A DNA stretch of 64,000 nt from positions 161,285-225,284 of IMG/VR virus record IMGVR_UViG_3300035698_018317. One strand, written 5' to 3'. The notes beneath the pieces are model-generated. The model was not told where the DNA came from, did no database searches, and saw only the letters and a list, made by a program, of their open reading frames with translations. Below are positions 10,375 through 63,245 of this stretch, piece after piece (the stretch's first letter is position 1; each line of letters begins with the position of its first letter). The translations under genes and the position numbers were made by a program.

Positions 10375-10403
10375 TTTACAAACTAGAACGGATGCACTAT
10401 TAT
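10375..10403 (+). promoter_or_regulatory. sigma70-type promoter of tRNA operon leader
   Basis: TTTACA (10375-80), 17-nt spacer, TATTAT (10398-10403). Confidence 0.75.
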
Positions 10404-10426
10404 ACGTTAGAAGTAGGAAAAGAAAC

Positions 10427-10513
10427 ATGAACACGAATACGTTTTATTTTAGTCTAAGCTTATTATCCTCATCGCTGCTCTTGAGCAACGATAAAGGAAC
10501 TGCTGTGGACTAA
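10427..10513 (+). CDS. putative attenuator leader peptide MNTNTFYFSLSLLSSSLLLSNDKGTAVD
   Basis: AGGA SD upstream; 15 consecutive codons encode only F/Y/S/L, the isotypes of the downstream tRNA array. Confidence 0.8.
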   Translation: MNTNTFYFSLSLLSSSLLLSNDKGTAVD

Positions 10514-10561
10514 GGTACAAAACACCTAGAGACGGGCAAAAGCCCCGAACCACAACGGTTC
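10497..10561 (+). promoter_or_regulatory. putative antiterminator helix
   Basis: GAACTGCTGTGG (10497-10508) pairs with CCACAACGGTTC (10550-10561) at 11 of 12 positions, mutually exclusive with the terminator stem. Confidence 0.65.
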
Positions 10562-10573
10562 GGGGCTTTTTTT
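10538..10573 (+). terminator. intrinsic terminator (attenuator) upstream of tRNA array
   Basis: AAAAGCCCCGAACC-ACAAC-GGTTCGGGGCTTTT followed by TTT. Confidence 0.9.
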
Positions 10574-10584
10574 GTTGTATTTTT

Positions 10585-10673
10585 GGAAAATAGGCAGATA
10601 TTGGCTTGCTGCGCTGGTTTGCTAAACCAGTTGGCCTGAAAGGGTCATGAGGGTTCGAATCCCTTGTTTTCCG
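10585..10673 (+). tRNA. trnS: tRNA-Ser(GCT)
   Basis: Acceptor GGAAAAT/GTTTTCC, anticodon arm CTGGT-TTGCTAA-ACCAG, long variable arm, TTCGAAT T-loop; CCA not encoded. Confidence 0.92.
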
Positions 10674-10676
10674 TTT

Positions 10677-10764
10677 GGAAAGTAGCCGAATATTGGTTTG
10701 TCGGGCTAGTTTCGAAAACTAGTTGGCCTTCGGGTCATAAGGGTTCGATTCCTCTTACTTTCCG
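10677..10764 (+). tRNA. trnS: tRNA-Ser(CGA)
   Basis: GGAAAGT/ACTTTCC, CTAGT-TTCGAAA-ACTAG, long variable arm. Confidence 0.92.
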
Positions 10765-10833
10765 TGGTGACGATTGCCAATGCAACGCTAGGTTGCATTA
10801 GTTTAAATAAATTTAAAAGTGAATATTGCCATC

Positions 10834-10905
10834 GGGCGGTTAACACTGTGGTCAGTGTGCTGGATTGAAGTCCCAGAAAAGTTGGTTCGATACCATCACC
10901 GCCCA
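10834..10905 (+). tRNA. atypical tRNA-Phe(GAA)-like
   Basis: GGGCGGT/ACCGCCC acceptor, D stem ACAC/GTGT, loop TTGAAGT with A31-C39 mismatch and a T-stem mismatch. Confidence 0.65.
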
Positions 10906-10923
10906 TTTTATGTACACTCCAAC

Positions 10924-10997
10924 GGTGGTTAGAGTGTGACGGTAGCACGGGTGAGCCTGAAACTCATCAAGAATGGGTTCGATTCCCATAACCACCA
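10924..10997 (+). tRNA. atypical tRNA, anticodon loop CCTGAAA (TGA in register; possibly Phe-derived)
   Basis: GGTGGTT/AACCACC, GTGAG/CTCAT anticodon stem, ATGGG-TTCGATT-CCCAT; C33 instead of U33; short variable loop, unlike Ser tRNAs. Confidence 0.6.
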
Positions 10998-11003
10998 TTA
11001 GTC

Positions 11004-11078
11004 GGAGCTTTGGTACTGGTCTGGTGACAGTGTGCGCCTGAAGAGCGTAAAAGTTCGGTTCGATTCCGAAAGGCTCCA
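11004..11078 (+). tRNA. trnF: tRNA-Phe(GAA) variant with G37
   Basis: GGAGCTT/AGGCTCC, TGCGC-CTGAAGA-GCGTA, TTCGG-TTCGATT-CCGAA. Confidence 0.75.
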
Positions 11079-11093
11079 TTTAGTTGTAAAAAC

Positions 11094-11166
11094 GCTGCGG
11101 TAGCTCAGTTGGTAGAGCACTAGACTGAAAATCTAGGTGTCGCTGGTTCGATTCCAGTCCGTAGCA
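11094..11166 (+). tRNA. trnF: tRNA-Phe(GAA), canonical
   Basis: GCTGCGG/CCGTAGC, GCTCAGTTGGTAGAGC D arm, CTAGA-CTGAAAA-TCTAG. Confidence 0.95.
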
Positions 11167-11168
11167 TT

Positions 11169-11316
11169 GGATATTCACATGGCGGAATATATTGTTTCAT
11201 TGACCCTTGTTCTTTATAGAAATGCAAATGGAACTACAAGGCACACGCAGCTTTCTTCGGGAAGTGTGACCTCCCAGCCGAGGTCTTGTCCGTTCAATTC
11301 GGACTGTGAATATCCT
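11169..11316 (+). ncRNA. 148-nt tRNA-like structured RNA
   Basis: 11-bp terminal stem GGATATTCACA/TGTGAATATCC stacked on T arm GTCCG-TTCAATT-CGGAC; internal helices CCTTGT/ACAAGG, CACAC/GTGTG with UUCG hairpin, ACCTC/GAGGT. Confidence 0.65.
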
Positions 11317-11320
11317 AAAC

Positions 11321-11402
11321 GGCAGTATTGAGCAATTGGCTGCTCCCCAGATTGTAAATCTGGCGTCGAAAGGCATTGAAGGTTCGAGTCCTTCTGCTGC
11401 CA
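11321..11402 (+). tRNA. trnY: tRNA-Tyr(GTA) copy 1
   Basis: GGCAGTA/TGCTGCC, CCAGA-TTGTAAA-TCTGG, long variable arm. Confidence 0.92.
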
Positions 11403-11405
11403 GTT

Positions 11406-11636
11406 ATGAGTAAGAAAGATGAAAATAAGCGTAGAGAATACCAAATGCAGAATTATTCCGTGTATTATTTTCCTATAACAGGAGAAGTAATGTGTTGCCC
11501 AAAAAAAAGAAGTGTATTTGGCGAGTTGCACGACCACCACTATTACATAAATTATTGTACTGATTGTGGGCAGCGAGTAAAACTTTTTGTTGCTAAAAGA
11601 AAACGTGTAGTTTGTGAACGTTGTAAAAAAGATTAG
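11406..11636 (+). CDS. small Zn-finger-like hypothetical protein within tRNA array
   Basis: ATG right after tRNA-Tyr; CTDC...CERC. Confidence 0.6.
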   Translation: MSKKDENKRREYQMQNYSVYYFPITGEVMCCPKKRSVFGELHDHHYYINYCTDCGQRVKLFVAKRKRVVCERCKKD

Positions 11637-11644
11637 TCTATTTC

Positions 11645-11726
11645 GGCAGTATTGAGCAATTGGCCGCTCAGCGGACTGTAAATCCGCCGCCTTCGGGCAT
11701 TGAAGGTTCGAGTCCTTCTGCTGCCA
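11645..11726 (+). tRNA. trnY: tRNA-Tyr(GTA) copy 2
   Basis: Same acceptor and T arms as copy 1, with GCGGA-CTGTAAA-TCCGC anticodon arm. Confidence 0.93.
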
Positions 11727-11732
11727 TTATTA

Positions 11733-11838
11733 GCCCCCGTGACGGAATTGGCAGACGTGCGAGTTTTAAGGGTTTAAGAACCCACTAAAAGAAACTCGTG
11801 TCCATACGGGCGTACAGGTTCGAGTCCTGTCGGGGGCA
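11733..11838 (+). tRNA. Leu-body tRNA with 22-nt insertion in anticodon arm (TAA if insertion is at 37/38)
   Basis: GCCCCCG/CGGGGGC, Leu-type D arm TGACGGAATTGGCAGACG, stem CGAGT/ACTCG enclosing 29 nt with an inner GGGTT/AACCC hairpin. Confidence 0.75.
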
Positions 11839-12060
11839 TTAAGATTCAAATTCTTTTTGAATCATCTCCATTACTTTGTTAAAATCTTTTTCACTAGTTG
11901 TTTTGGTTTGAACGTATTCGGCAGCTTTATCTATAGTGAGACCGCCTGTGCGAATGCTATTTACCATCTTACTAGCTAATTTATTTAAATTTAATTCACC
12001 ATAACCCCCAACAAGTGGTGGCATTAATCTTGATTCTAACCATGTGTTAAAAGTTTTCAT
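11839..12060 (-). CDS. small protein with CTS-like N-terminus (MKTFNTWLES), antisense within tRNA array
   Basis: Fills the gap between two tRNA genes exactly; shared N-terminal motif; ATAGATA upstream. Confidence 0.65.
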   Translation of the reverse strand: MKTFNTWLESRLMPPLVGGYGELNLNKLASKMVNSIRTGGLTIDKAAEYVQTKTTSEKDFNKVMEMIQKEFES

Positions 12061-12073
12061 AATGTATCTATTC

Positions 12074-12158
12074 GCCCTAGTGACGGAATTGGCAGACGTG
12101 CTGGCCTTAAAAGCCGGTGTCAATATATGGCGTGCAGGTTCGAGTCCTGTCTAGGGTA
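12074..12158 (+). tRNA. trnL: tRNA-Leu(TAA)
   Basis: GCCCTAG/CTAGGGT, CTGGC-CTTAAAA-GCCGG, long variable arm. Confidence 0.92.
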
Positions 12159-12160
12159 TT

Positions 12161-12233
12161 TTCTGGGGACGTGGTGTGCAGAATGAAGTTAGGACTACAC
12201 AAGGCTTATAGGTTCGAGTCCTATCACGGAACA
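12161..12233 (+). pseudogene. degenerate tRNA-like element
   Basis: Intact T arm ATAGG-TTCGAGT-CCTAT and imperfect acceptor TTCTGGG/CACGGAA; no recognisable D or anticodon arm. Confidence 0.45.
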
Positions 12234-12238
12234 TCTCT

Positions 12239-12326
12239 GGAAAGCAGCCGAATATTGGTTTGTCGGGCTAGTTTTGAAAACTAGTTGGCCTCCGGGTCAT
12301 AAGGGTTCGATTCCTCTTGCTTTCCT
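12239..12326 (+). tRNA. trnS: tRNA-Ser(TGA)
   Basis: GGAAAGC/GCTTTCC, CTAGT-TTTGAAA-ACTAG. Confidence 0.9.
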
Positions 12327-12329
12327 TTT

Positions 12330-12418
12330 GGATGGGAGCCGAATATTGGTTTGTCGGGCTAGTTTGGAAAACTAGTTGGCCTGAAAGGGTCATTAGGGTC
12401 CAATTCCCTACTCATCCG
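12330..12418 (+). tRNA. trnS: tRNA-Ser(GGA)
   Basis: GGATGGG/CTCATCC, CTAGT-TTGGAAA-ACTAG; T-loop variant TCCAATT. Confidence 0.85.
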
Positions 12419-12476
12419 TTCGAATAAAAATATAAAAATTATTCGAACCTTTACTATTATATAGTGGAGGTAAAAA

Positions 12477-13037
12477 ATGAAAGAAAATATTCTTAGATTA
12501 AGAAAAGAAGGAAAATCATATGGAGAAATACAAAAAGAGCTAGGTTGTTCTAAAAGCACAATCTCATATCACTGTGGAGAAGGGCAGAGGGAAAAACAGG
12601 TTGAGAGGCAAAGGCAATTCAGAAAAAACAATGTAATTACTAGAAGAATTGGTTCGTTTACACAAAACAGACCTAAAAAAAAGAACAAACAACCTAAATT
12701 TGAAAGAAGCGTAACTCAAAAAACACAAGAAAAAAGTTATGATTTCCAACGCAAACAAAAATGTTCTAAATTTAATTTCAAAGATGTATTAGAGCATTAT
12801 GGAGAACAAACAACATGTTACTTATCTGGAAGACTTATTGATTTATCAGAACCTAGAACTTATCATTTTGACCATATAATTCCGGTTTCAAAAGGAGGAG
12901 ATTGTAGTTTTGAAAACTTAGGAATTGTTCGTAAAGAAGCAAATAGGGCTAAAAGTGACCTATTAGTAGAAGAATTTATTGAGCTTTGTAAAGACATTCT
13001 CGAATACAATGGTTATACAGTAATTAAAAACGATTAA
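12477..13037 (+). CDS. HNH homing endonuclease with N-terminal HTH
   Basis: LRKEGKSYGEIQKELGCSKSTISYH HTH; CYLSG...HFDHIIPVSKGG...ENLG...N..K. Confidence 0.85.
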   Translation: MKENILRLRKEGKSYGEIQKELGCSKSTISYHCGEGQREKQVERQRQFRKNNVITRRIGSFTQNRPKKKNKQPKFERSVTQKTQEKSYDFQRKQKCSKFNFKDVLEHYGEQTTCYLSGRLIDLSEPRTYHFDHIIPVSKGGDCSFENLGIVRKEANRAKSDLLVEEFIELCKDILEYNGYTVIKND

Positions 13038-13065
13038 TTATCAAACTAAAACAATATATAATGTT

Positions 13066-14052
13066 ATGGGTGCTCAAACTACAGAGGGAACAGGATTTGG
13101 TTCTGCTGAAGGTCCAATTAGAGGACTAGGCGATGTAACCAAGATTCTAAAAAAGAATGCTGATGGGTCAGCATTCTCAAGTGAAGATAGCGTCATTAGA
13201 GAAACTAGTGGCGGTGATGCTGTAGATATACCTATAGACCCAATAGATGGCTTAGATGCTGAAAATGTTCAAGAAGCTTTAGAAGAACTCCAAGAAGAAG
13301 TTGAGGCTGGTGGGATTCCACCATTAGCGGAAAACATCACTGTTATACCAGTTGGAGATTTAACATCAACAAATGTACAAGATGCGTTAGAAGAACATCA
13401 GGATGACATAGATAATATCGAATCAGATGTTGCTATAAATGCATTTGATATTTTTACTAATGCCACAAATATTGATGGAAAAATAGATAAGATTTCTGCT
13501 CCGGTTACTGGGAATTTCCCATTAATTACGGCGACTGGTGAGGTGTCTAATTCTACGGTGGGTCCAGATGATTATTATACTCAGGGAGAAATAGACGCTT
13601 TAGAATACAGTCACTCTAGCTTATTAGACCTTCAAGGTGGAAGTGCTTCAGAAAGATACCATTTAACAAATGCACAACATACCAATTTAACTGATGGCGA
13701 CCCCACATTTGATACGATTGTTTTAAATGATATTATCCTTAATGACAGCCAAGCCACAACAAAAGAATATGTAGATTCTATAGTAGCTGGTTCTGGTGCT
13801 TGGTTAGACCCTGTAATTGACTTCAGTACAGAAGCAGCAGCCACAGAAACTACTGGCTTTCGCTATATTGCCTCTGCGGATGGTTCGACTTGGACAAAAG
13901 ATAATATTTATGAATATAATGGTGCATCGTGGGATGAAACAGTAATAGCTTCAGGAAATACTACTTTTGTAGAAGATTTAGGATTAGTCTACTTATTCAC
14001 TGGAACTAGTTGGGTTGATACTGGTGGAGTGTTCCAAATCATAATGACTTAG
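13066..14052 (+). CDS. virion fibre/structural protein, N-terminal part (frameshifted into next ORF)
   Basis: Acidic, Gly/Thr-rich; TNVQDALEE and LQGG..ERYHLT motifs; reading continues in the -1 frame past 14040. Confidence 0.7.
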   Translation: MGAQTTEGTGFGSAEGPIRGLGDVTKILKKNADGSAFSSEDSVIRETSGGDAVDIPIDPIDGLDAENVQEALEELQEEVEAGGIPPLAENITVIPVGDLTSTNVQDALEEHQDDIDNIESDVAINAFDIFTNATNIDGKIDKISAPVTGNFPLITATGEVSNSTVGPDDYYTQGEIDALEYSHSSLLDLQGGSASERYHLTNAQHTNLTDGDPTFDTIVLNDIILNDSQATTKEYVDSIVAGSGAWLDPVIDFSTEAAATETTGFRYIASADGSTWTKDNIYEYNGASWDETVIASGNTTFVEDLGLVYLFTGTSWVDTGGVFQIIMT

Positions 14053-16511: not shown

Positions 16512-16534
16512 AATTATTTTACTATATTAAATAC

Positions 16535-17624: not shown

Positions 17625-17657
17625 AAAATTATATATACAGTTTGTGCTCAAAAACAA

Positions 17658-18301: not shown

Positions 18302-18407
18302 GGCTGAATGACGGAATTGGCAGACGTGCGAGCTTTTAGGGTTTGAAAACCCATTAAAAGGTGCTCGTGTCCTTCGGGGCGTGTGGGTTCGAATCCCTCT
18401 TTGGCCA
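18302..18407 (+). tRNA. second Leu-body tRNA with 22-nt anticodon-arm insertion (TTA if insertion is at 37/38)
   Basis: GGCTGAA/TTTGGCC, same D arm, stem CGAGC/GCTCG enclosing 29 nt with an inner GGGTT/AACCC hairpin; 106 nt like the first copy. Confidence 0.72.
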
Positions 18408-18421
18408 GTAAGGAAATTGTT

Positions 18422-18880
18422 ATGTGGCGTGAAGAATACGACGAATACGATGATGATGGCTATCCTTATTATTATCATGATGGCCTTGGTTGTCGTTGTT
18501 ATAAATATGACAGACCTCCTTATAATAAAAATTATAACGTGCCGTCTCATATTCATATAATGAACAAGAATGAGGCGAAAGTAATGCGTCGTCTCAAAAA
18601 TGAAACTGGTTTATCTGAAGAGGGTATTCGAAAGATTAAGAAATATCGAATTATGCTTTCTGAAGCTCAAAAAGAAGGGCAAAAAGCCAAACGGACAAGG
18701 GTGCAAAAAGCTAGAGATGAAGTAATGAAATGCGTTTGTCGTAAGCTTAAATTAGCCAAAGAACATCCTGTTACACAGAAAGCATATCGTGAAGAATGGG
18801 AACGGCGGCGAAAGGAATATGATAATCGTCCTTGTTGTAATAGTAGTATTTATCTAGAATCACCAAAGGATGATAGATAA
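18422..18880 (+). CDS. hypothetical protein
   Basis: ATG after a GTAAGGA SD, between tRNA genes. Confidence 0.65.
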   Translation: MWREEYDEYDDDGYPYYYHDGLGCRCYKYDRPPYNKNYNVPSHIHIMNKNEAKVMRRLKNETGLSEEGIRKIKKYRIMLSEAQKEGQKAKRTRVQKARDEVMKCVCRKLKLAKEHPVTQKAYREEWERRRKEYDNRPCCNSSIYLESPKDDR

Positions 18881-18885
18881 AATCC

Positions 18886-18969
18886 AGCCTCGTGACGGAA
18901 TTGGCAGACGTTCGGGACTTAAAATCCCGTGCCCTTCGGGGCGTGTGGGTTCGAGTCCCACCGAGGCTA
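18886..18969 (+). tRNA. trnL: tRNA-Leu(TAA)
   Basis: AGCCTCG/CGAGGCT, CGGGA-CTTAAAA-TCCCG. Confidence 0.93.
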
Positions 18970-18983
18970 TTTAGAAATAATCA

Positions 18984-19067
18984 GGCCGAGTGACGGAACT
19001 GGCAGACGTGCGGGGTTCAAATTCCCGTGTCCGAAAGGGCGTGTGGGTTCGAGTCCCACCTCGGCCA
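18984..19067 (+). tRNA. trnL: tRNA-Leu(CAA)
   Basis: GGCCGAG/CTCGGCC, CGGGG-TTCAAAT-TCCCG. Confidence 0.92.
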
Positions 19068-22643: not shown

Positions 22644-22659
22644 TAAATTAATTGCTTAG

Positions 22660-22690
22660 AAAAAGGTGTCACAATTTGTGGCACCTTTTT
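22660..22690 (+). terminator. intrinsic terminator
   Basis: AAAAAGGTGTCAC-AATTT-GTGGCACCTTTTT. Confidence 0.75.
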
Positions 22691-22705
22691 CTATATTATA
22701 GTAAC

Positions 22706-24040: not shown

Positions 24041-24701
24041 AATAATACATCTTCTTTCGTATCCTAAAGAGGAAAGAGAAATTAATTCTATTTCCTCAAT
24101 AAGTAAATTGGATATTCCTTATACTCAACACGTAAACACTGTGTTCACAGGTAAACCTCCTGAGAGTAAATGGCCGTGTGAAAATTCCATAAGGGAGACA
24201 TCATACGGATGTTACGATTCTCATAAAAAAGCTCTTGGTGAATTTAATACAGATTATCTTTTAGTCTGTGAGTGTGATTGTATTATCTCAATTCCTCCTA
24301 GCCAATTTCTTGAAATATTACCATTTTATATCAAAGATATGGAAGAGAATAATATTGCTTGTTTAGGGATTGGCTCTTTTTGTAATACGATAAAAAAAGA
24401 AACTAAAGAATTGTATATTTGTGAGAAAATGGCCTGTACTCAATGTTTGCTATACTCGTCTGAATATAAAGAAATGATAAACCAAGATGAAGATTGGCAA
24501 CCATATGACAGTTGGTTGAGTCGAATTTTAGGAGAAAAAGGAAAATTAGCTGTTGTAAAACAACGTACAACGCATCAACATATTGGTCGTTCATTGATAG
24601 ATGGATTAGATAAAAGAATGGCGAAAAGAGTAGATTCTAATGGCACAGAAGATATATTTACCATATGGTCAGATGGCATGATATACAATGCTACTTTTTA
24701 A
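24000..24701 (+). CDS. glycosyltransferase (GT25-like)
   Basis: YGCYDSH..AL, LVCECDC, D.WL; alternative TTG start at 24030. Confidence 0.6.
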   Translation: MNIIKRISKYLDIKIIHLLSYPKEEREINSISSISKLDIPYTQHVNTVFTGKPPESKWPCENSIRETSYGCYDSHKKALGEFNTDYLLVCECDCIISIPPSQFLEILPFYIKDMEENNIACLGIGSFCNTIKKETKELYICEKMACTQCLLYSSEYKEMINQDEDWQPYDSWLSRILGEKGKLAVVKQRTTHQHIGRSLIDGLDKRMAKRVDSNGTEDIFTIWSDGMIYNATF

Positions 24702-24708
24702 GTTTCAT

Positions 24709-25854: not shown

Positions 25855-25857
25855 AAA

Positions 25858-34538: not shown

Positions 34539-34552
34539 ACCCGCTCATTTTT
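34517..34552. terminator. bidirectional terminator between convergent genes
   Basis: AAAAATGAGCGGGTT-GATTT-AAACCCGCTCATTTTT. Confidence 0.85.
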
Positions 34553-35231
34553 ACTTTTTCCTTTCCAAAATCTCTTCTGGAGTAAGATTAGGTTGCCATT
34601 GTCTGATTTTTTTTCTGAGAACTGACAGAGGGACACCATGTTCGTTGCCACTAACTCCATACTTATCAGCCATACCTTGATGATGCCCAGCTAAGAACCT
34701 TGCAAAATCTTCTAATTGTGTTCCATATTGTCCTTTATCAGACAACATATGAGCATGGTCTTGCCACCAAGGAGAAGTTGGTTCTTGTATGTAAGTCACA
34801 TATCCAGCTTTTTGAGCAGCAATAACGTAATTTTCCATTTCCCATGCTTGGACATTAGTGTTGTCAATAATGATAGGATGGACATTTTCAGATAGAGCCT
34901 TTTTAAATCTCCTGAAGTTCCAATCATGAGCGGCCCGTAATTTATCTCCACTCCAATTTTCTCTATAAGTTTCTGGCTCTAATTCTGCATAGTATGCTTC
35001 GTCAATTTCTTCACCACGTTCAAGTTTATCTTGTTTTTCTTTGATAATCTCTAATATGAAAAAATCATCCGAGCCAAAGATATGACTTGCAGGGTCTAAA
35101 TTTTCTCCGTATTGTTTTAAAACTTCTTTAGCGGTATAACTTTTACCACTTCCTGAAATACCTCTCATGATAACACAGGTTTTTTGTTCTTTACGGTCTA
35201 CGTAATTTACGAATCTCATTCCATCACTCAT
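34551..35231 (-). CDS. P-loop kinase (AAA_33 / N4BP2-type polynucleotide kinase-like)
   Basis: MRGISGSGKS, IIIDNTN, WE..NY, QEP..PW. Confidence 0.78.
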   Translation of the reverse strand: MSDGMRFVNYVDRKEQKTCVIMRGISGSGKSYTAKEVLKQYGENLDPASHIFGSDDFFILEIIKEKQDKLERGEEIDEAYYAELEPETYRENWSGDKLRAAHDWNFRRFKKALSENVHPIIIDNTNVQAWEMENYVIAAQKAGYVTYIQEPTSPWWQDHAHMLSDKGQYGTQLEDFARFLAGHHQGMADKYGVSGNEHGVPLSVLRKKIRQWQPNLTPEEILERKK

Positions 35232-35899
35232 TTGTATACCACCTTTGAAAACCATATAGGTTCTTCATCCACAATCCAAGTCATTCCGCAATTTTTCATG
35301 CCGCTAATGAATGCACTGCTATGTTTTGCTACTTCTTCTGAAAAATCTTCATTGTTAGATTCTAATATTTTACTAGCTTTTTCACATTCTTTCTTTATTT
35401 CCTCACGGGTATTTCCGATTGCAAGTTTAGAAAACATTACAGACGGAGCACCGTGTGTGACTAATACGTATTTATCATGTCCAGATTTTTTTAGGTCCAG
35501 AAGTAGTTCAAGAGAACGGTCTATCCAAACATCAATAGACTCTGGATTAAATTTTCTACTGTCATCGTCTAACCAATCATTAGGCCAACCAATATTCTGA
35601 AAAAGTAAAGACCTATTTGGAATATCAATTATTTCAGGGTTATGAAATCTATACTCACCCAATCTGTCATCTACATGAAATTCAGTCTCCAATATTTCAG
35701 ACAAAACAGATGCGGTCTGTAGAGTTCTATTATAGGGGCTAACAAGCCCTTTGTAATCCTCAAATTTAAAATTTTCGTACAACCAAGTAGCTGTTCTACA
35801 AACTTGAGTCATCCCTGCATCTGTCAAGGTGCTATCTAAGTTATAAGTAACCCCCATATTACGACGACTTTCTGCATGTCTAATTATCAATAATTCCAT
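35228..35899 (-). CDS. histidine phosphatase family protein
   Basis: IIRHAES, SPYNRTLQTA, LGE, LVTHG. Confidence 0.88.
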   Translation of the reverse strand: MELLIIRHAESRRNMGVTYNLDSTLTDAGMTQVCRTATWLYENFKFEDYKGLVSPYNRTLQTASVLSEILETEFHVDDRLGEYRFHNPEIIDIPNRSLLFQNIGWPNDWLDDDSRKFNPESIDVWIDRSLELLLDLKKSGHDKYVLVTHGAPSVMFSKLAIGNTREEIKKECEKASKILESNNEDFSEEVAKHSSAFISGMKNCGMTWIVDEEPIWFSKVVYK

Positions 35900-53856: not shown

Positions 53857-54891
53857 ATGGATTCACAAGAAGTATTAACGTTTGATTCGTGTCGCAGGTT
53901 TGGTGCGGAGATTGAAATCTGTTCCTTTGACCATCGTGACTTCAAAAACAACCCCTTAGAGGGTAACGAAATGCCTCAAGGCATTGAAGAAGTGGCCCAT
54001 ACCTTGATGGAGGGCTTAAATGCCCAAGTCATTGTCAATAAATGGCACCATACGCATAATAATGAATCGTGGGTGGTTAAACCTGATTCATCTGCGGGTA
54101 TTGAGGTTTGCTCTCCAGTCATTAAAGGGTGGCGAGGCATCAGGGATGTATGTACTGCTGTCGAGTTGATGAAAACAAATCCTGAAGTGGCTGTAGATGG
54201 AAAATGTGGTTTTCATATTCATGTTGAAGTGGAAGATTTTGACACCAGACTTTTAGGCAAAGCTCTTGCTTGGTGGGTAAAATGTGAATCTGTGTTTATG
54301 GATTCTGTTCCATCTTGCAGGAAAAGAAATAAATATTGCGAACAAGTGGGATTGAGTCCAGTATTCCAACATGACACAAGAATTGATGGAGAGTGGCTTG
54401 TTAATTTACTGGGTGAGATGAAGTATTATACAATTAATACTTATCACCTATGTAAAGGTAAAAGAAAGACTATTGAGTTCCGAATCATCGAAGGCAAAGG
54501 TTGTCTTGATTCATATCTTATAAAAAATTGGATGAGGTTACTCATTCATTTTGTAGAGATGGCTAAAAAAGCACCGTGGCCTAAGAGATATAAAGAAGAC
54601 AATCCTTGGACTGGATATTTGTGGTTAGATTTTCGTGATGTGATGAAATTTCTAGGATTTGACGGGCCGTTGTCTAAAGGGTTGGAAGAAACAAGAAACT
54701 GGTTTATAGCTAGAATACAGAAAAATATACGTGAGAATTTATCTGGTTGTTTGTCTGAATCTGCCCGAGGCATTTGTGCCCAACAGGTTGAAGAATTCAT
54801 AGCTCAACACGGACTTGGTGATGACCTTTCAAATTGGTTGGTGCCGGAGAATTTGGAAGAGGCGTTATATTCAAAAGAAACAGCTTTATAA
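53857..54891 (+). CDS. putative amidoligase (COOH-NH2 ligase type 2)
   Basis: FGAEIE, W.VKPDSS, EVCSPV, CGFHIHV, TIEFR. Confidence 0.82.
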   Translation: MDSQEVLTFDSCRRFGAEIEICSFDHRDFKNNPLEGNEMPQGIEEVAHTLMEGLNAQVIVNKWHHTHNNESWVVKPDSSAGIEVCSPVIKGWRGIRDVCTAVELMKTNPEVAVDGKCGFHIHVEVEDFDTRLLGKALAWWVKCESVFMDSVPSCRKRNKYCEQVGLSPVFQHDTRIDGEWLVNLLGEMKYYTINTYHLCKGKRKTIEFRIIEGKGCLDSYLIKNWMRLLIHFVEMAKKAPWPKRYKEDNPWTGYLWLDFRDVMKFLGFDGPLSKGLEETRNWFIARIQKNIRENLSGCLSESARGICAQQVEEFIAQHGLGDDLSNWLVPENLEEALYSKETAL

Positions 54892-56015: not shown

Positions 56016-56027
56016 GAGGATTTACCT

Positions 56028-57379: not shown

Positions 57380-57386
57380 ACCTTAT

Positions 57387-57737: not shown

Positions 57738-57807
57738 TTTTTTATAGAAACATGATTTAATTTATGTTAAACTAATTGAGTAATATATAAAAGATTTTAG
57801 GAGAAAT

Positions 57808-58251
57808 ATGAAACTTAAACAATCAGGTGGTGAAGAACAATTTAAAACAGGTGCGGTCAGAGATGTGGCCGATGACAAACCAAGACCTGATTTGATATCC
57901 CCGTTTGCCGAAGAACGGTTGGGGGTGTGGATGAGATTAGGTGCTGTCCGATACGCTGAGAGGAATTGGGAACAAGGGATGCCTATGTCTCGTACTCTTG
58001 CCTCTTTAAATAGGCATTTAATGTGGTACAAACAAGGAAAGAAGGATGAAGACCATCTTTCGGCAATTATGTTTAATGCCATGGCTTTGATTCACCATGA
58101 AGAGATGATAAAAAGAGGGGTGTTGCCCAAAGAGTTAGGAGATTTGCAAACATATTCTATTGAAAGTCAAAATGATAATGAAGCAAAAAAGATTTCGCCC
58201 TCTAAAAAGAAAGCCAACAAGAAAACGCACAATAAGACGAAGAAAGGATAA
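57808..58251 (+). CDS. dATP/dGTP diphosphohydrolase-like (DUF5664)
   Basis: TGAVRD..DKPR.DLI...GA.RY..RNWE.GM...SL.RHL...EDHL.A..FN. Confidence 0.82.
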   Translation: MKLKQSGGEEQFKTGAVRDVADDKPRPDLISPFAEERLGVWMRLGAVRYAERNWEQGMPMSRTLASLNRHLMWYKQGKKDEDHLSAIMFNAMALIHHEEMIKRGVLPKELGDLQTYSIESQNDNEAKKISPSKKKANKKTHNKTKKG

Positions 58252-58252
58252 T

Positions 58253-58741
58253 ATGAGAAGTAGCTGGAAAGAATTATTGAAGGTAGCATATGAGGAAGCT
58301 GTTAACAGTCCAGACCCATCAACTCAAAATGCGGCTTTGTTGGTGAATGATGGGGCTGTTGTTTTAAAGGCGGTTAACGAGTTCCCAATTGGCGTGGAGT
58401 ACACAGAGGAAAGATGGGAAAGACCTTTAAAATATAAAATTATTGAACACGCAGAAAGAAATGTAATTTATAAGGCCGCAAGACAAGGAATCGCTACTGA
58501 TGGGTTAACAATGGTTTCTCCATGGTCGTGTTGTTCCGATTGTGCCCGTGCGATTATCCAAGCTGGAATAAAATGTTTAGTTAGACATAAAGATGCGGGT
58601 GATAGGTCGCCGGAATTTTGGGCAGAGGAAATAGCTATTGCGGACCAAATGCTCAAGGAAGCTGGTTTGGAAGTATTAGATTATCATGGTAAAATAGGTG
58701 CGCCGGAAGTACGTCATTCTGGTCAGATTTGGAGTCCATAA
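58253..58741 (+). CDS. dCMP deaminase
   Basis: S.DPSTQ..A, HAERN, PW.CC.DCARAIIQAGI. Confidence 0.88.
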   Translation: MRSSWKELLKVAYEEAVNSPDPSTQNAALLVNDGAVVLKAVNEFPIGVEYTEERWERPLKYKIIEHAERNVIYKAARQGIATDGLTMVSPWSCCSDCARAIIQAGIKCLVRHKDAGDRSPEFWAEEIAIADQMLKEAGLEVLDYHGKIGAPEVRHSGQIWSP

Positions 58742-58742
58742 T

Positions 58743-60327: not shown

Positions 60328-60356
60328 ACAGGTATATACTATGGAAAAGGGATTAT

Positions 60357-60782
60357 ATGCAATTATCGTTTAAAAAATTTATAGAATTAGAGAAAGTTGA
60401 ACCAGATTTTCTGGGTAAAACCGCAGATGAATTGGCTATAGACCCTAAGAGTTTTAAAGCGGCACCACAATGGCTCGGAGCAGCACAGTTTGGTAGTTAT
60501 TACTATAATGGGATGACATATACCATTAAAAACTTCCTTCCTGAAGACCCACAATCTGAGGATGAAATAACTGGCGCTGTGTTAACAGCGATGCCAGCGG
60601 TAGATACTCAACGTGCGTATTATGCAGATAAAAAAGGTCGTACTATTCGTTCTCCGAATAATGACCCAGAAGAAGGTAGAGAAGTCACTGTAGATAGAAA
60701 AACCTTAAACGACATGATGACACAAGGGATGAACCAGCCACAACAACAGCAAGCGGGTGGTATGCCCGGAGGAATGATGTAA
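60357..60782 (+). CDS. hypothetical protein with CTS-like N-terminus (MQLSFKKFIELE) and Q/G/M tail
   Basis: Shared motif; ends QPQQQQAGGMPGGMM. Confidence 0.68.
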   Translation: MQLSFKKFIELEKVEPDFLGKTADELAIDPKSFKAAPQWLGAAQFGSYYYNGMTYTIKNFLPEDPQSEDEITGAVLTAMPAVDTQRAYYADKKGRTIRSPNNDPEEGREVTVDRKTLNDMMTQGMNQPQQQQAGGMPGGMM

Positions 60783-60973
60783 TGGAAACACCTAAAGAAA
60801 ATACATTTACAAGTTTTAAGCAATTTATAAAATTGCAGGAAGTAGGAACTAGTACAGGCGATGTAGCAGCTTTTAAGAGGATGACCATACCGGGACAGAT
60901 TAAGAGACAATTTCCTCCTTGGGGAGATGAAGACCCATTCTTCAAGAAGAAAAAAAAGAAATTGCTTGGATAG
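60782..60973 (+). CDS. small protein with FKQFIKLQE motif
   Basis: Translationally coupled to previous gene; shared motif. Confidence 0.6.
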   Translation: METPKENTFTSFKQFIKLQEVGTSTGDVAAFKRMTIPGQIKRQFPPWGDEDPFFKKKKKKLLG

Positions 60974-61175
60974 TTGAATAAAATAAACTATTATAAGAGC
61001 AGTGTTCGGACAACAGCACCAACACTAAACTTGGCATACCCGTGCCAGCGGTTAGGAAGCCGACCTTTTGTTGCAATAGTGTTTTACAAGTGAAATAGAG
61101 AATTAGATATAATAATGGAAATTTGAAGTTGATGCTGAATAAGTTGTTGCAGCAAAGATGAAATTCCAAAAAAAT

Positions 61176-61210
61176 AAAAAACCCACTTAAATAATTTTAA
61201 GTGGGTTTTT
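61176..61210. terminator. terminator-like hairpin
   Basis: AAAAACCCACTTAA...TTAAGTGGGTTTTT. Confidence 0.7.
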
Positions 61211-61248
61211 GTTTTGTAATTGAATTTGATTTAAGATATAATCTTTTT

Positions 61249-62145
61249 ATGAAATCAATACACATTGTAGAAGATACATTACCTGTTGCATGGGAAAAGG
61301 CTGTTTTAGCTTGTTGGGAAGAGGGTGAGAATTTTCCTACTGAATATGATAAAGAAAGTGACCCAAATAGCCGGGACGTTACCGCACTTATCCATGTCAA
61401 AAACCCAATGGCAGAACCTAGAATTCATCGTGCGTTTCCCGGTGGTCTACATGATTTAGAAAAATATCGTTCAGAAGTTATGTACGGAGTCCACAACCAT
61501 TGGATAGACCCTAAAGCTGGTAAATGGGAATACACATATCATGAAAGATTGTTTGAATACGATGTGGCAGAAGTTGTAACAACAACTCCGAAGAGTGGTA
61601 TTACCTATCCGTTTACACATATATGTACGCAGTATGACCAAATACAAAAATGTATTGAAATGATTAAGGCTTGTCCCTTCACCAGACGTGCTCAGGCCGT
61701 GACATGGAAAGTGTGGGAAGATTTAGGCATTTCCGACCCAACTTGTTTACAGAGAATTTGGGTTCGCTGTCAAGATGGTAAAATGCATATGAATGTTCAT
61801 ATGAGAAGCAACGATGCATTCAAAGCGGCTTTCATGAATATGCACGCCTTCACAGAATTACAGGCATATATGGCAGCAGAAGCCGGATATGAAATGGGGG
61901 AGTATATTCACATAGCAGATTCGTTCCACATCTACGGAAGTTATTTCGAAGATTTCAAAGGGTTCTTAAATATTGTTGACAAGCGAGAGCCTGAAGATAG
62001 AGTTTTCACAACCGAAGAAGCTAACTTTTTCTTTATTGATGGGTGTAATGAACTTTTAGCAGAAGAAGATATGCCAGAAAAGAAAAAAGAAATAGTTAGA
62101 GAAAGAAAAGCATATTTGGAAATGGGACTGGATGATGACAAATAA
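61249..62145 (+). CDS. thyA: thymidylate synthase (ThyA family, archaeal-like form)
   Basis: YTY.ERL, TRRAQ, PTCLQ, MRSND..KA..MN, H.ADSFHIY. Confidence 0.82.
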   Translation: MKSIHIVEDTLPVAWEKAVLACWEEGENFPTEYDKESDPNSRDVTALIHVKNPMAEPRIHRAFPGGLHDLEKYRSEVMYGVHNHWIDPKAGKWEYTYHERLFEYDVAEVVTTTPKSGITYPFTHICTQYDQIQKCIEMIKACPFTRRAQAVTWKVWEDLGISDPTCLQRIWVRCQDGKMHMNVHMRSNDAFKAAFMNMHAFTELQAYMAAEAGYEMGEYIHIADSFHIYGSYFEDFKGFLNIVDKREPEDRVFTTEEANFFFIDGCNELLAEEDMPEKKKEIVRERKAYLEMGLDDDK

Positions 62146-62398
62146 AAAAGAAATAGAAGTTTCAGAACAAAATCTACGTGATGTTTTAAAAATAAAAGAA
62201 ATGAGCAAAATACCAACACAGACACTTTGTGAAATTTTAGGAACGGTAGAGCGGTCAAAAAAAAGTTTAATAGAACGTATAATAGCAGGCTCATGGTTTA
62301 AAAAACGGGCTAAAAAACGGACTGAAAAATTGGTTAATGATTTAGATATTCTTATTCTTCGAAAAAATGGAGTTAATTTCCGAGTTCATTTAGGATAA
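62132..62398 (+). CDS. hypothetical protein
   Basis: ORF in operon. Confidence 0.55.
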   Translation: MMTNKKEIEVSEQNLRDVLKIKEMSKIPTQTLCEILGTVERSKKSLIERIIAGSWFKKRAKKRTEKLVNDLDILILRKNGVNFRVHLG

Positions 62399-62408
62399 AG
62401 GCACAAAT

Positions 62409-63245
62409 ATGAAAGCATTAGAAAACGTCTGGGATTTGGTTGGTAAATTTACTAAGAACCCAAAATATGTAGAAATTAGTAATTTGGCAATTGAATCTTG
62501 GATTGACAAGTTAAAGGAAGTAAAATTAGAAGATGAGGTTCGTCCTCCAAAAGTGACTAACGATGCTGAGTTATTGGAATACGAACTTATAGCTGGTGCA
62601 GTTAATTATTGCTATTGGTACGGGTCTCCAAAAGTAAGGCCGTGTGGAGCTAACGCATGGGCTATGTATAGTGTTTTAAATGAAGTGTATGACCCAAGAA
62701 GTTGTGATGTTATACCAGACTTTATTTCAGCTTTATCTTTAAATCGGTTCCCTCTTATGAATGAACGCTCATCTCATTTGATGGAGTTAGTTAATACTGA
62801 TTACAAAGCGATGGCAATGGAACTATACCGATGCAGAGATAATTTGGAGAGTTGTTTAGAAAAAATTCTTGTCTATCCGGGTTATGCAAATGATATGTTT
62901 TTGAAACGAGCATCTTTGTTTTTTATGCAAGTTGCAAGACAATCTGATATGTTTGAATCACAAATAAATATGTTGCCAGTTCCCGCTGATTATCAAGTTC
63001 CTAAGATGTTAGAACACATGGGAATATTGCAATATAGTGCCGAATTGAAAAAGACTATAGATGAAGGGATACTAATTCCTTCTGGTTCTCTTATGGAGTG
63101 TGAGATTCGAGCGTCTATGATTGCTGCGTGTCATACACTTTGTGTGAAATCTAAACAGAATTCAAGCGTTGTAGACTATTGGCTGTGGCTGAACAGGAAA
63201 TCATGTGATAATAATTTCCATTTGACGATTACTACTGATTACTAG
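62409..63245 (+). CDS. queuosine salvage protein (DUF2419/QNG1-like)
   Basis: AVNYCYW, KRA.L, ADYQVP..L...GILQYS..L...I..G..I..GS..E.EIRA, D..LW. Confidence 0.8.
   Translation: MKALENVWDLVGKFTKNPKYVEISNLAIESWIDKLKEVKLEDEVRPPKVTNDAELLEYELIAGAVNYCYWYGSPKVRPCGANAWAMYSVLNEVYDPRSCDVIPDFISALSLNRFPLMNERSSHLMELVNTDYKAMAMELYRCRDNLESCLEKILVYPGYANDMFLKRASLFFMQVARQSDMFESQINMLPVPADYQVPKMLEHMGILQYSAELKKTIDEGILIPSGSLMECEIRASMIAACHTLCVKSKQNSSVVDYWLWLNRKSCDNNFHLTITTDY

What the first reader, a model, noticed from the sequence alone, without database searches (positions are those of the whole stretch)
10375..63245. Integrated phage tRNA supply chain: sensing, supply, 5' maturation, repair and modification salvage
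Seen in one window: an attenuator-led array with all four Ser anticodons, Phe, Tyr x2 and Leu x3 (none encoding CCA), an RNase P RNA, an adjacent P-loop kinase and His-phosphatase pair, and a QNG1-like queuosine salvage enzyme. Established: tRNA-Tyr(GUA) is a Q34 tRNA. Inference: together these may form a counter-defence module against tRNA-depleting host immunity. Co-occurrence alone does not show a shared pathway.
Basis: inference. Interest (0 to 1): 0.72.

Follow-up and report, generated by a model that had tools for sequence, protein, structure and literature searches.

The report
Self-regulated phage tRNA supply kit
A huge salt-lake phage carries a tRNA gene array that appears to switch itself on when ribosomes run short of exactly those tRNAs, plus a stripped-down RNase P RNA of a kind that recurs inside many phage tRNA arrays. 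Its kinase/phosphatase pair and queuosine-salvage-like enzyme are real but are not shown to belong to the same pathway.

Summary
The window is the last 64 kb of a 225-kb fragment of a huge phage.

1. A promoter, a 28-codon leader ORF and a strong terminator sit just before the first tRNA, like a classical leader-peptide attenuator. The ORF holds 15 consecutive Phe/Tyr/Ser/Leu codons. The leader is conserved in three close lineages. A distant relative has a diverged leader with the same fold. Its 14-codon run samples all ten anticodon species of its own Ser/Tyr/Leu array.
2. The RNase P RNA is 233 nt and keeps the catalytic domain but lacks the specificity domain. The same reduced form occurs in 30 other viral contigs, 24 of them within 1 kb of tRNA genes.

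Elsewhere the genome encodes a CCA-adding enzyme and an Rnl5-like RNA ligase. No RtcB, TGT or RnpA was found.

The kinase/His-phosphatase pair is conserved but lies in the replication module. The QNG1-like gene lies among nucleotide-metabolism genes and is confined to this lineage.

The parts are scattered over 53 kb on both strands. A single counter-defence module is not supported. A demand-regulated tRNA supply and maturation system is.

The parts
10375..10403 (+). Sigma-70-like promoter (TTTACA-N17-TATTAT) of the leader and tRNA array
   Evidence: It is the best promoter-like site in 9300-13200. Both hexamers are conserved in three lineages, while the DNA upstream cannot be aligned.
10427..10513 (+). 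Leader ORF of 28 codons. Codons 6-20 are TTT TAT TTT AGT CTA AGC TTA TTA TCC TCA TCG CTG CTC TTG AGC.
   Evidence: The peptide is conserved in lineages B and C, with 4 of 5 substitutions synonymous. There is an analogous leader in G006.
10538..10575 (+). Intrinsic terminator (14-bp stem, T7) ending about 9 nt before the first tRNA. 10497-10508 can pair with its loop and 3' arm as an antiterminator.
   Evidence: RNAalifold on four leaders keeps the 1:2 helix, the inner hairpin and the terminator.
10584..12419 (+). tRNA array 1: Ser GCU, Ser CGA, Phe-like GAA (10834), an odd class-I tRNA (10925), Phe-like GAA (11004), Phe GAA, Tyr GUA x2, Leu-like with a 22-nt insert (11733-11838), Leu UAA, Ser UGA, Ser GGA. 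None encodes CCA.
18302..19067 (+). tRNA array 2: Leu-like with a 22-nt insert (18302-18407), Leu UAA, Leu CAA
29626..29858 (-). RNase P RNA of 233 nt, bacterial type A catalytic domain only. P1-P5, P15 with the GGU motif, a P18-like hairpin and the P4 pseudoknot are present. The specificity domain P7-P14 is absent.
   Evidence: P4, P5 and P15 covary among 9 phage copies.
29862..30299 (-). YqeY/GatB-tail-like protein immediately 5' of the RNase P RNA in the same transcription unit. The adjacency is not conserved.
34551..35255 (-). P-loop kinase (AAA_33) of the PNK-like clade, with N4BP2, CNPase and KTI12 as neighbours. Walker A is GISGSGKS; an IIDNTN motif is present.
35228..35899 (-). Histidine phosphatase (branch 1). 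An RH motif lies at residues 7-8 and a second His in THG.
   Evidence: The adjacency to the kinase is conserved in L029 and L033.
62409..63245 (+). QNG1/DUF2419-like protein (Q_salvage) next to a ThyA-like gene (61201-62145)

Best explanation
The phage carries a demand-regulated supply and maturation system for a defined subset of tRNAs (Ser, Leu, Tyr and Phe). It is dispersed in the genome rather than organised as one module.

(1) Sensing and supply. This step is inferred from anatomy and comparison. Transcription from the promoter at 10375 runs into a strong terminator about 9 nt before the first tRNA gene. A ribosome translating the 28-codon leader decides the outcome.
- If it stalls on the F/Y/F/S/L/S... 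codons, region 1 is covered. The segment GAACTGCTGTGG is then free to pair with the terminator's loop and 3' arm, and the polymerase reads through into the tRNA array.
- If decoding is fast, the ribosome reaches the stop codon and covers that segment.
- If there is no translation, region 1 pairs with it.
In both of the last two cases the terminator forms. Because the run samples the codons read by the array's own tRNAs, the circuit is a negative feedback that makes these tRNAs on demand.

(2) Maturation. The gene content is shown; the function is inferred. The pre-tRNAs lack CCA and are completed by the phage's CCA-adding enzyme. Their 5' leaders are cut by RNase P. The phage adds its own RNA subunit, which has the catalytic domain only and has no phage RnpA. 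It would therefore have to use the host protein or act with relaxed recognition of the tRNA elbow.

(3) Healing and sealing. This step is weak. A PNK-like kinase, a His-phosphatase and an Rnl5-like ligase provide the chemistry for RNA end healing and sealing, but nothing ties them to tRNA.

(4) The QNG1-like enzyme keeps the catalytic Asp-Tyr. Its link to tRNA-Tyr is unsupported.
For: Attenuator in this window. Promoter, Shine-Dalgarno sequence, ORF and terminator are in the canonical order. In the minimum-free-energy fold the first regulatory codons pair with the end of the ORF and the stop codon. Ribosome masks at codons 7-14 give the antiterminator in nascent transcripts; masks at the stop codon, or no mask, give the terminator.

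Conservation in close lineages. The stretch from the -35 hexamer to the terminator is about 95% identical in three lineages, while the flanks and tRNA-Ser(GCU) diverge. There are changes that keep or improve pairing: a C-G to U-A swap in the inner hairpin, U.G to C-G in the antiterminator, and A.C to A-U in the 1:2 helix.

Distant relative G006. It has a diverged leader, VHTFSVNLLSSYYSLSLSLSS..., with the same fold and a terminator before a 16-tRNA array bearing only Ser, Tyr and Leu anticodons. All 14 run codons are cognate to that array, and all 10 anticodon species are represented. It has no Phe tRNA and no Phe codon in the run, unlike the window. RNAalifold gives 43 pairs, 8 of them with double compensatory changes.

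RNase P RNA. E is about 1e-17 to 1e-19, with P4 and the other catalytic-domain elements aligned. 30 viral contigs of 35-68% GC carry the reduced form, and 24 have tRNAs within 1 kb, mostly on the same strand inside arrays. P4, P5 and P15 covary. No RnpA was found in 12 records.

Other enzymes. The CCA-adding enzyme has PolyA_pol plus its RNA-binding domain; 0 of 11 tRNAs encode CCA. The ligase combines a PHA02142 OB fold with an RNA_ligase domain, and its nearest solved relative is the Naegleria Rnl5.
Against: No expression data exist; no RNA run was listed.

Attenuator. The full-length leader always folds into the terminator thermodynamically, so antitermination would have to be kinetic. In the window the antiterminator takes the loop and 3' arm rather than the 5' arm. 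Lineage B keeps the full leader but has only Ser and a Phe-like tRNA downstream. Lineage C lost the TCG codon yet keeps Ser(CGA). The leader codons CTA, CTG and CTC have no plain cognate tRNA in the window, unless the two insert-bearing Leu-like genes mature to Leu(UAG). Only four distinct leader sequences are known.

RNase P RNA. It scores below Rfam's gathering score. It lies 10.5 kb from the nearest tRNA, on the other strand, inside a protein operon. It is missing from the syntenic site of a close relative.

Other enzymes. The kinase/phosphatase pair lies in the replication module. In the QNG1-like protein the phosphate-binding Lys233 is Gln, and no TGT was found.
Confidence: 0.55

Rival explanations
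1. All five parts form one integrated counter-defence module that senses and repairs damage from host anticodon nucleases or other tRNA-depleting immunity.
For: A stall-sensing leader would respond to tRNA loss. The genome holds supply, CCA addition, 5' processing, a PNK-like kinase, a phosphatase and an RNA ligase. From established knowledge, T4 Pnkp and Rnl1 reverse PrrC damage, and phage T5 tRNAs offset tRNA-targeting defences.
Against: There is no physical or operon linkage. The kinase/phosphatase pair is syntenic with replication genes. Q_salvage is found only in this lineage. The RNase P RNA is absent from a close relative's syntenic site. No nuclease target is known that matches Ser, Leu, Tyr and Phe. 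No expression or infection data exist.
Confidence: 0.15
2. This is the ordinary reading. The tRNAs are plain codon-usage helpers. The small ORF and terminator are a short gene or the end of an upstream transcript. The other genes are unrelated auxiliary genes that happen to lie in one window.
For: F/Y/S/L runs are not rare in the six-frame translation of this AT-rich genome. The terminator is always the thermodynamic winner. The record is only 44% complete, so other tRNAs may lie elsewhere. Large phages often carry CCA-adding enzymes and RNA ligases.
Against: The promoter lies between the upstream gene and the terminator, and there is no room for another promoter before the first tRNA. Leader composition follows array composition in two diverged lineages, down to one codon per anticodon species in G006. 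The fold is kept by compensatory changes. F, Y, S and L are not the phage's most used residues: K, L, E and I lead.
Confidence: 0.2
3. The reduced RNase P RNA is not a processing enzyme for phage tRNAs. It is a decoy that titrates host RnpA or pre-tRNA to shut down host tRNA maturation, or it is a decaying relic of a captured host gene.
For: No RnpA is found in any of 12 records. The RNA lacks the domain that binds the tRNA elbow. In this window it is not in the array and lies inside an mRNA operon.
Against: The catalytic-core nucleotides, P4 and the L15 GGU motif are conserved, and helices covary across phages of 35-68% GC, which indicates selection on the fold. Its position inside tRNA arrays on the same strand in most contigs fits co-expression with its substrates.
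Confidence: 0.1

Closest known systems
Leader-peptide transcription attenuators of enterobacterial amino-acid operons (trpL, pheL, hisL, thrL, leuL) and pheM of pheST
   Same: Promoter-proximal short ORF with a run of regulatory codons. An intrinsic terminator lies before the first regulated gene. The pairings 1:2, 2:3 and 3:4 are mutually exclusive and are set by ribosome position. There is a weak sub-threshold Rfam hit to Thr_leader (26.5 bits, E 0.88).
   Different: The regulated genes are tRNA genes, not biosynthetic or synthetase genes. The run mixes three or four amino acids and samples each isoacceptor of the array. The antiterminator in the window uses the terminator's loop and 3' arm. 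No such control of a tRNA array was found in the searchable literature.
Long tRNA arrays induced under translational stress (Anabaena trn operon)
   Same: An accessory tRNA array that is switched on when translation is impaired (PMC8421152 and PMC10272220, listed).
   Different: According to the title and abstract of PMC10272220, that operon is controlled by a protein repressor, TrcR. It is cellular, not viral.
Type T RNase P RNA of Pyrobaculum and engineered catalytic-domain-only bacterial RNase P RNAs (recalled from memory, not tested here)
   Same: The catalytic domain is retained and the specificity domain is largely lost.
   Different: Here the core is bacterial type A, is encoded by phages (30 viral contigs), and mostly sits inside tRNA arrays. 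No cognate protein subunit is encoded.
T4 Pnkp plus Rnl1/Rnl2 tRNA repair against PrrC (established knowledge)
   Same: A PNK-like P-loop kinase, a phosphatase and an RNA ligase are all present in one phage genome.
   Different: The phosphatase belongs to the histidine-phosphatase superfamily and is a separate protein, not a fused HAD domain. The ligase is Rnl5-like and lies 67 kb away. The pair sits in the replication module.
QNG1 / DUF2419 queuosine-5'-monophosphate glycosylase (PMC9881137)
   Same: The PF10343 match is above the cut-off. Asp231-Tyr232 align to D194-Y195, Phe75 to Tyr69 and Arg80 to Lys75. By eye, a C-terminal D-x-x-x-W resembles Asp298/Trp302.
   Different: The protein is about 50 residues shorter. 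Lys233 is Gln. It is encoded by a phage next to a ThyA-like gene. It belongs to a family of more than 700 proteins of about 280 residues from metagenomes; three sampled contexts were on phage-like contigs. No TGT partner was found.

Membership tests
Leader-peptide (ribosome-mediated) transcription attenuator | Short ORF with a ribosome-binding site directly downstream of a promoter | tested here: met
   TTTACA-N17-TATTAT, AGGA 8 nt before the ATG, and a 28-codon ORF. All are conserved in three lineages.
Leader-peptide (ribosome-mediated) transcription attenuator | Run of codons for the molecule whose supply is regulated | tested here: met
   There are 15 consecutive F/Y/S/L codons, and 12 have a plain cognate tRNA in the array. 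In G006, 14 of 14 codons are cognate and 10 of 10 anticodon species are sampled.
Leader-peptide (ribosome-mediated) transcription attenuator | Intrinsic terminator between the leader and the first regulated gene | tested here: met
   A 14-bp stem plus T7 ends about 9 nt before tRNA-Ser. G006 has a 13-bp stem plus T9.
Leader-peptide (ribosome-mediated) transcription attenuator | Mutually exclusive pairings that depend on ribosome position | tested here: inconclusive
   Masked folds give the antiterminator only for stalls at codons 7-14 and only in nascent transcripts. The terminator wins in the full-length RNA. Covariation comes from only four sequences.
Leader-peptide (ribosome-mediated) transcription attenuator | Read-through rises when the cognate charged tRNA is scarce | not testable with these tools
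   No RNA run was listed.
Bacterial RNase P RNA, type A (RF00010) | Score at or above Rfam's gathering score | tested here: not met
   62.9 bits against 100; E is about 1e-17 to 1e-19.
Bacterial RNase P RNA, type A (RF00010) | Catalytic domain: P1-P5, P15 with GGU, P18, and the P4 pseudoknot with its conserved nucleotides | tested here: met
   GAGGAAAGUC and ACAGAAUCCCGCUUAC are aligned. P4, P5 and P15 covary in 9 phage copies.
Bacterial RNase P RNA, type A (RF00010) | Specificity domain (P7-P14) | tested here: not met
   About 110 model positions are replaced by 12 nt. The RNA is 233 nt against a 367-position model.
Bacterial RNase P RNA, type A (RF00010) | Cognate protein subunit RnpA in the same genome | tested here: not met
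   PF00825 is absent from the own record and from 11 other records. The records are incomplete.
T4 Pnkp-type RNA end-healing and sealing | Polynucleotide 5'-kinase of the P-loop PNK clade | tested here: inconclusive
   AAA_33 at 43 bits. The match to the polynucleotide-kinase PHROG covers the P-loop only (25 bits). Structural neighbours are N4BP2-like and CNPase P-loop domains at TM 0.60-0.68. No solved relative is found by sequence.
T4 Pnkp-type RNA end-healing and sealing | HAD-type 3'-phosphatase fused to the kinase | tested here: not met
   The phosphatase is a separate His_Phos_1 protein.
T4 Pnkp-type RNA end-healing and sealing | RNA ligase partner | tested here: met
   An Rnl5-like ligase lies at about G000:C1:127.7-129.0 kb. 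It is not adjacent. No RtcB or T4 Rnl1 family match was found, although the Rnl1 search was uninformative: that model matched none of the 14 control genomes either.
QNG1 / DUF2419 (PF10343) | Pfam match above the curated cut-off | tested here: met
   68.3 bits against 25, but only profile positions 169-271 are matched.
QNG1 / DUF2419 (PF10343) | Catalytic Asp231 and Tyr232 (StQng1 numbering) | tested here: met
   D194 and Y195 align to them. Residue roles are from PMC9881137.
QNG1 / DUF2419 (PF10343) | Lys233, which contacts the 5'-phosphate | tested here: not met
   It is Gln196.
QNG1 / DUF2419 (PF10343) | A transglycosylase able to insert the salvaged base into tRNA | tested here: not met
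   No TGT (PF01702) was found on the 225-kb record. The record is 44% complete, and a host enzyme is not excluded.
CCA-adding enzyme (class II nucleotidyltransferase) | PolyA_pol head domain plus RNA-binding domain | tested here: met
   PF01743 at 94 bits and PF12627 at 29 bits in a 518-aa ORF.

The most novel reading that the evidence does not exclude
Phages of this group run an autonomous, feedback-controlled tRNA biogenesis pathway with three parts.
- A leader peptide that samples one codon for each isoacceptor of the downstream array switches tRNA transcription on when any of them runs short.
- A widespread phage family of RNase P RNAs without a specificity domain processes the array transcripts, including non-canonical tRNAs.
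- The 22-nt inserts in four anticodon loops are true mini-introns. They are removed by an unknown nuclease and rejoined by the phage's kinase, phosphatase and Rnl5-like ligase.
Probability: 0.2. Interest if true: 0.92.

Novelty: new variant of a known kind. Interest (0 to 1): 0.8.

Why it matters
Leader-peptide attenuation is a textbook mechanism, but it is known for amino-acid and synthetase operons. A version that measures decoding capacity for each isoacceptor and answers by making those same tRNAs would be a new regulatory logic. It would also give a direct, testable handle on why phages carry tRNAs: on-demand supply rather than constitutive codon-usage help. That includes supply when host immunity or the phage itself depletes tRNAs.

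A natural bacterial-type RNase P RNA without a specificity domain, recurring in at least 30 viral contigs and in tRNA arrays of bacterial assemblies, bears on how RNase P recognises substrates. These arrays include one in a cultured Achromobacter isolate. The form escapes Rfam's threshold, so current annotation pipelines would miss it.

The report also prunes the original claim. The kinase/phosphatase pair and the QNG1-like gene should not be counted as parts of a tRNA module on present evidence.

Tried and rejected
- YqeY as a protein partner that replaces the missing specificity domain. Rejected: no YqeY above the cut-off in 5 other records with the reduced RNase P RNA. A close relative with YqeY at 77% identity has no RNase P RNA downstream or anywhere in its 63-kb record.
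- The 332-aa ORF downstream of the RNA. No family, no relatives, and a low-confidence model.
- The RNase P RNA in relatives G006, G007, G008, G009 and G010. Not found, but most of these are fragments.
None found by a simple scan for a terminator plus a small ORF.
- 18302-18407 as an ochre suppressor (ARAGORN's 'tRNA-Stop tta'). Rejected as unlikely: TAA ends 132 of 187 long ORFs and the standard code reads the genome well. No other genetic code is proposed.
- The 22-nt inserts as archaeal bulge-helix-bulge introns. The bulges are 4 nt and 1 nt, which is not canonical. Other features point to a bacterial host: tRNA-Tyr with a long variable arm, a sigma-70-type promoter, an intrinsic terminator and a type A RNase P core.
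- BLAST of the RNase P region against GenBank phages. No informative match.
- Literature searches for phage-encoded RNase P RNA and for leader-controlled tRNA arrays. Nothing found in the held library. This does not prove that no report exists.
- RNA sequencing runs. None was listed.
- My first CCA count was wrong, because ARAGORN includes an encoded CCA in its coordinates. It was redone.

Full report
WHERE THE WINDOW LIES. The window is bases 161285-225284 of a 225,284-bp IMG/VR virus record that CheckV rates 44% complete. It is therefore the end of a fragment of a very large phage. Near-identical DNA is held by many salt-lake metagenome runs. GC content is about 36%. The standard code reads the genome well: there are 187 ORFs of 150 aa or more, and TAA is the main stop. 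All tRNA genes of the record lie in the window.

THE OBSERVATION.
- ARAGORN finds Ser GCU, CGA, UGA and GGA, Phe GAA, two Tyr GUA, and Leu UAA x2 and CAA.
- Rfam adds four more tRNA genes. Two are class-I tRNAs with a GAA anticodon (10834, 11004). Two are 106-nt Leu-like genes (11733, 18302).
- None of the ARAGORN calls encodes CCA.
- The RNase P RNA is at 29626-29858 on the minus strand.
- The AAA_33 kinase and the His_Phos_1 phosphatase are overlapping neighbours at 34551-35899.
- The Q_salvage protein is at 62409-63245.

THE LEADER IN THIS WINDOW. The best promoter-like site of the region is TTTACA-N17-TATTAT at 10375. It is followed by an AGGA ribosome-binding site and a 28-codon ORF, MNTNTFYFSLSLLSSSLLLSNDKGTAVD. 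A 14-bp G+C-rich hairpin with a T run follows, ending about 9 nt before tRNA-Ser(GCU). No room is left for another promoter, so the array's first genes can only be transcribed by reading through this terminator.

In the minimum-free-energy fold the first regulatory codons (TTT TAT TTT AGT CTA AGC) pair with the end of the ORF and its stop codon. When a 30-nt ribosome footprint is placed on codons 7-14, the freed segment GAACTGCTGTGG pairs in the nascent transcript with CCACAACGGTTC, which is the terminator's loop and 3' arm. With no ribosome, or with a ribosome at the stop codon, the terminator forms. This is the logic of the trp, his and thr attenuators. The terminator is the thermodynamic winner in the full-length RNA, so the switch would have to be kinetic.

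THE LEADER IN RELATIVES. A search with the neighbouring VWA protein and a 24-mer scan of metagenomes gave three close lineages: A (window, L027), B (L014, L024, L026) and C (L023, L025, L028).
- From the -35 hexamer to the terminator they are about 95% identical, although the DNA upstream cannot be aligned and tRNA-Ser(GCU) downstream has diverged more.
- Four of five substitutions in the ORF are synonymous.
- The inner hairpin changes C-G to U-A on both sides.
- ACT to ACC turns a U.G pair of the antiterminator into C-G.
- A C-to-T change closes an A.C mismatch of the 1:2 helix.

The decisive comparison is a distant relative, G006 (340 kb; VWA protein 43% identical).
- Its 16-tRNA array carries only Ser, Tyr and Leu anticodons: Ser GCU, GGA, CGA, UGA; Tyr GUA; Leu CAA, UAA, UAG, GAG, CAG.
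- It is preceded by TTGACA-N17-TAAGAT, a 27-codon ORF VHTFSVNLLSSYYSLSLSLSSAGRWTE and a strong terminator.
- The run CTA CTG TCC AGT TAT TAT TCA TTA TCG CTC TCG TTG TCG AGC contains only codons read by that array, and at least one codon for each of its ten anticodon species.
- There is no Phe tRNA and no Phe codon in the run. The window has Phe tRNAs and begins its run with TTT TAT TTT.
- The fold is the same, and masked folds again give an antiterminator only for mid-run stalls.
- RNAalifold on the four leaders keeps 43 pairs, 8 of them through double compensatory changes.

I conclude, at about 0.6, that this is a ribosome-mediated attenuator that makes the array's tRNAs on demand. The weak points are as follows.
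- Lineage B keeps the leader but has a two-gene array.
- Lineage C lost the TCG codon but not Ser(CGA).
- Only four distinct sequences are known.
- There are no RNA data.

No paper in the held library describes such control of a tRNA array. The nearest case, the Anabaena trn operon, is under a protein repressor according to the title and abstract of its paper.

THE RNase P RNA. The 233-nt RNA aligns end to end with the type A model. It has P1-P3, GAGGAAAGUC, P5, P15 with GGGUA, a P18-like hairpin and ACAGAAUCCCGCUUAC. About 110 positions of the specificity domain are replaced by 12 nt, which is why it scores 62.9 bits, under the gathering score of 100.

Three pattern scans of IMG/VR used the two P4 strands at spacings of 105-195 nt; a full-size type A RNA has roughly 280 nt between them (my estimate from E. 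coli M1 RNA, not measured here). They found 30 contigs of 35-68% GC. In 24 the RNA lies within 1 kb of a tRNA gene, mostly under 100 nt away, on the same strand, and inside arrays of up to 37 tRNAs. P4, P5 and P15 covary among nine copies.

The same pattern occurs in 27 prokaryote assemblies, 9 of them next to tRNAs. One is a 32-tRNA cluster in the isolate Achromobacter anxifer LMG 26857. None of 12 virus records encodes RnpA. So the reduced RNA is a recurrent companion of phage tRNA arrays, and I found no report of it.

In this window it is atypical. It lies 10.5 kb from the nearest tRNA, on the other strand, and inside an operon (transglutaminase-like gene, an unknown ORF, YqeY, the RNA, an unknown ORF) with no promoter or terminator of its own. 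The attractive idea that YqeY, a tRNA-binding tail domain, replaces the lost domain fails. YqeY does not co-occur with the RNA elsewhere, and a close relative has YqeY without the RNA.

OTHER tRNA ENZYMES. The record encodes a 518-aa CCA-adding enzyme, which fits tRNA genes without CCA. It also encodes an Rnl5-like RNA ligase whose nearest solved relative is the Naegleria enzyme. It has no RtcB or TGT; the T4 Rnl1 search also found nothing, but that model matched none of the 14 control genomes either, so it is uninformative.

Among the eight other records with the reduced RNA:
- the CCA-adding enzyme is present in three or four, including both that are about 89% complete;
- an RNA ligase is present in five;
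- an AAA_33 kinase is present in two;
- Q_salvage is present in none.
There is no background rate for large phages, so this is descriptive only.

THE KINASE/PHOSPHATASE PAIR. The kinase has the Walker A motif GISGSGKS and an IIDNTN motif. Its nearest named clusters are N4BP2-like and CNPase P-loop domains, and one homologue is fused to a 2H phosphoesterase. So it belongs to the polynucleotide-kinase-like clade. The phosphatase keeps the catalytic His residues but matches no specific subfamily.

The gene pair is conserved in relatives at 59% and 48% identity and is lost at 33%. It always lies between the DnaB-NUDIX-PolA-RNase H block and the DEAD-box helicase, as it does in the window. RNA end healing is possible, and a ligase exists, but a role in DNA or nucleotide metabolism is at least as likely.

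THE QNG1-LIKE PROTEIN. It is above Pfam's cut-off. It aligns to Sphaerobacter Qng1 with the nucleophile Asp231 and Tyr232 kept, Phe75 as Tyr and Arg80 as Lys, but Lys233 as Gln. By eye, a C-terminal D-x-x-x-W resembles Asp298/Trp302.

It belongs to a family of more than 700 proteins of about 280 residues from metagenomes. Three contexts were sampled, all on phage-like contigs: beside ribonucleotide reductase, beside Macro and AAA_28 genes, or near dCMP deaminase. Here it sits by a ThyA-like gene, with a dCMP deaminase 3.7 kb upstream. tRNA-Tyr(GUA) is a queuosine tRNA by established knowledge, but nothing here connects the two.

VERDICT. Sensing, supply, CCA addition and 5' processing form a coherent system backed by comparison. 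Repair and queuosine salvage are unproven additions. There is no single module, and counter-defence is one possible purpose among others.

What remains unexplained is why the arrays hold just Ser, Leu and Tyr (plus Phe). In bacteria Ser, Leu and Tyr are the class II tRNAs, and most of the codons read by the arrays begin with U.

Noticed in passing
window 11733-11838 and 18302-18407; L025:1055-1150; L031:15235-15338: Four tRNA genes in three related phages have exactly 29 nt (7 + 22) between the strands of the anticodon stem. The central hairpin covaries: GGGTT/AACCC, AGGTT/AACCT, AGAGT/ACTCT. Removing 22 nt after U34 of 11733 gives an anticodon arm that matches the uninterrupted Leu(UAG) of G006 apart from one compensatory pair. 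This would also supply the CTA/CTG/CTC codons of the leader. The inserts are not canonical bulge-helix-bulge introns and are too short for group I introns. The mechanism of removal, if any, is unknown.
   Followed up: partly
window 10834-10905, 10925-10996, 11004-11078, 11094-11166: Four consecutive class-I tRNA genes have UGAA in the anticodon loop. Three read as Phe(GAA) with very different bodies; one of them has an A.C pair at 31-39. The fourth has the loop CCUGAAA, with C33, and ARAGORN calls it Ser(UGA). It is unclear why the phage keeps several divergent Phe-like genes.
   Followed up: partly
window 10677-10764 and 12239-12326 (also L025:417-504 and 2496-2583): ARAGORN draws Ser(CGA) and Ser(UGA) with an 8-bp acceptor stem and a 5-bp T stem containing a mismatch. 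They score better against Rfam's tRNA-Sec model (35-39 bits, under its cut-off of 47) than against the general tRNA model. Ser(GGA) at 12329 has a T loop UCCAAUU without the usual U55.
   Followed up: no
L087 (G006:C1:99500-111500, minus strand): The 340-kb relative has an array of 16 tRNAs with only Ser, Tyr and Leu anticodons. Four of them are 76-nt, class-I-sized tRNAs with Leu anticodons.
   Followed up: partly
window 11406-11636 (+) and 12477-13037 (+): A 76-codon ORF with CxxC...CxxC pairs, like a zinc ribbon, lies between the two tRNA-Tyr genes. An HTH-HNH homing-type endonuclease gene follows the array, which suggests that mobile elements reshape it.
   Followed up: no
window 58160-58741, 61201-62145, 62409-63245: A dCMP deaminase, a divergent thymidylate-synthase-like protein (best match is the archaeal type, below its cut-off) and the Q_salvage-like protein lie close together. 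They may form a nucleotide or DNA-base modification cluster.
   Followed up: no
window 22652-26862: A cluster of a glycosyltransferase-sulfotransferase fusion, a GT9-like gene and a sulfotransferase lies between the tRNA arrays and the RNase P RNA.
   Followed up: no
window 37659-38012 (-), 53857-54891 (+), 31071-31541 (-): An ART-PolyVal ADP-ribosyltransferase domain protein, an Amidoligase_2 protein and a transglutaminase-like protein are present. The last is the first gene of the operon that holds the RNase P RNA.
   Followed up: no
L083 (Achromobacter anxifer LMG 26857, NZ_CAHLAR010000005.1): A cultured bacterium carries the reduced RNase P RNA pattern 31 nt from a tRNA gene, inside a cluster of 32 tRNA genes within 8 kb. 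This is a ready experimental system.
   Followed up: partly
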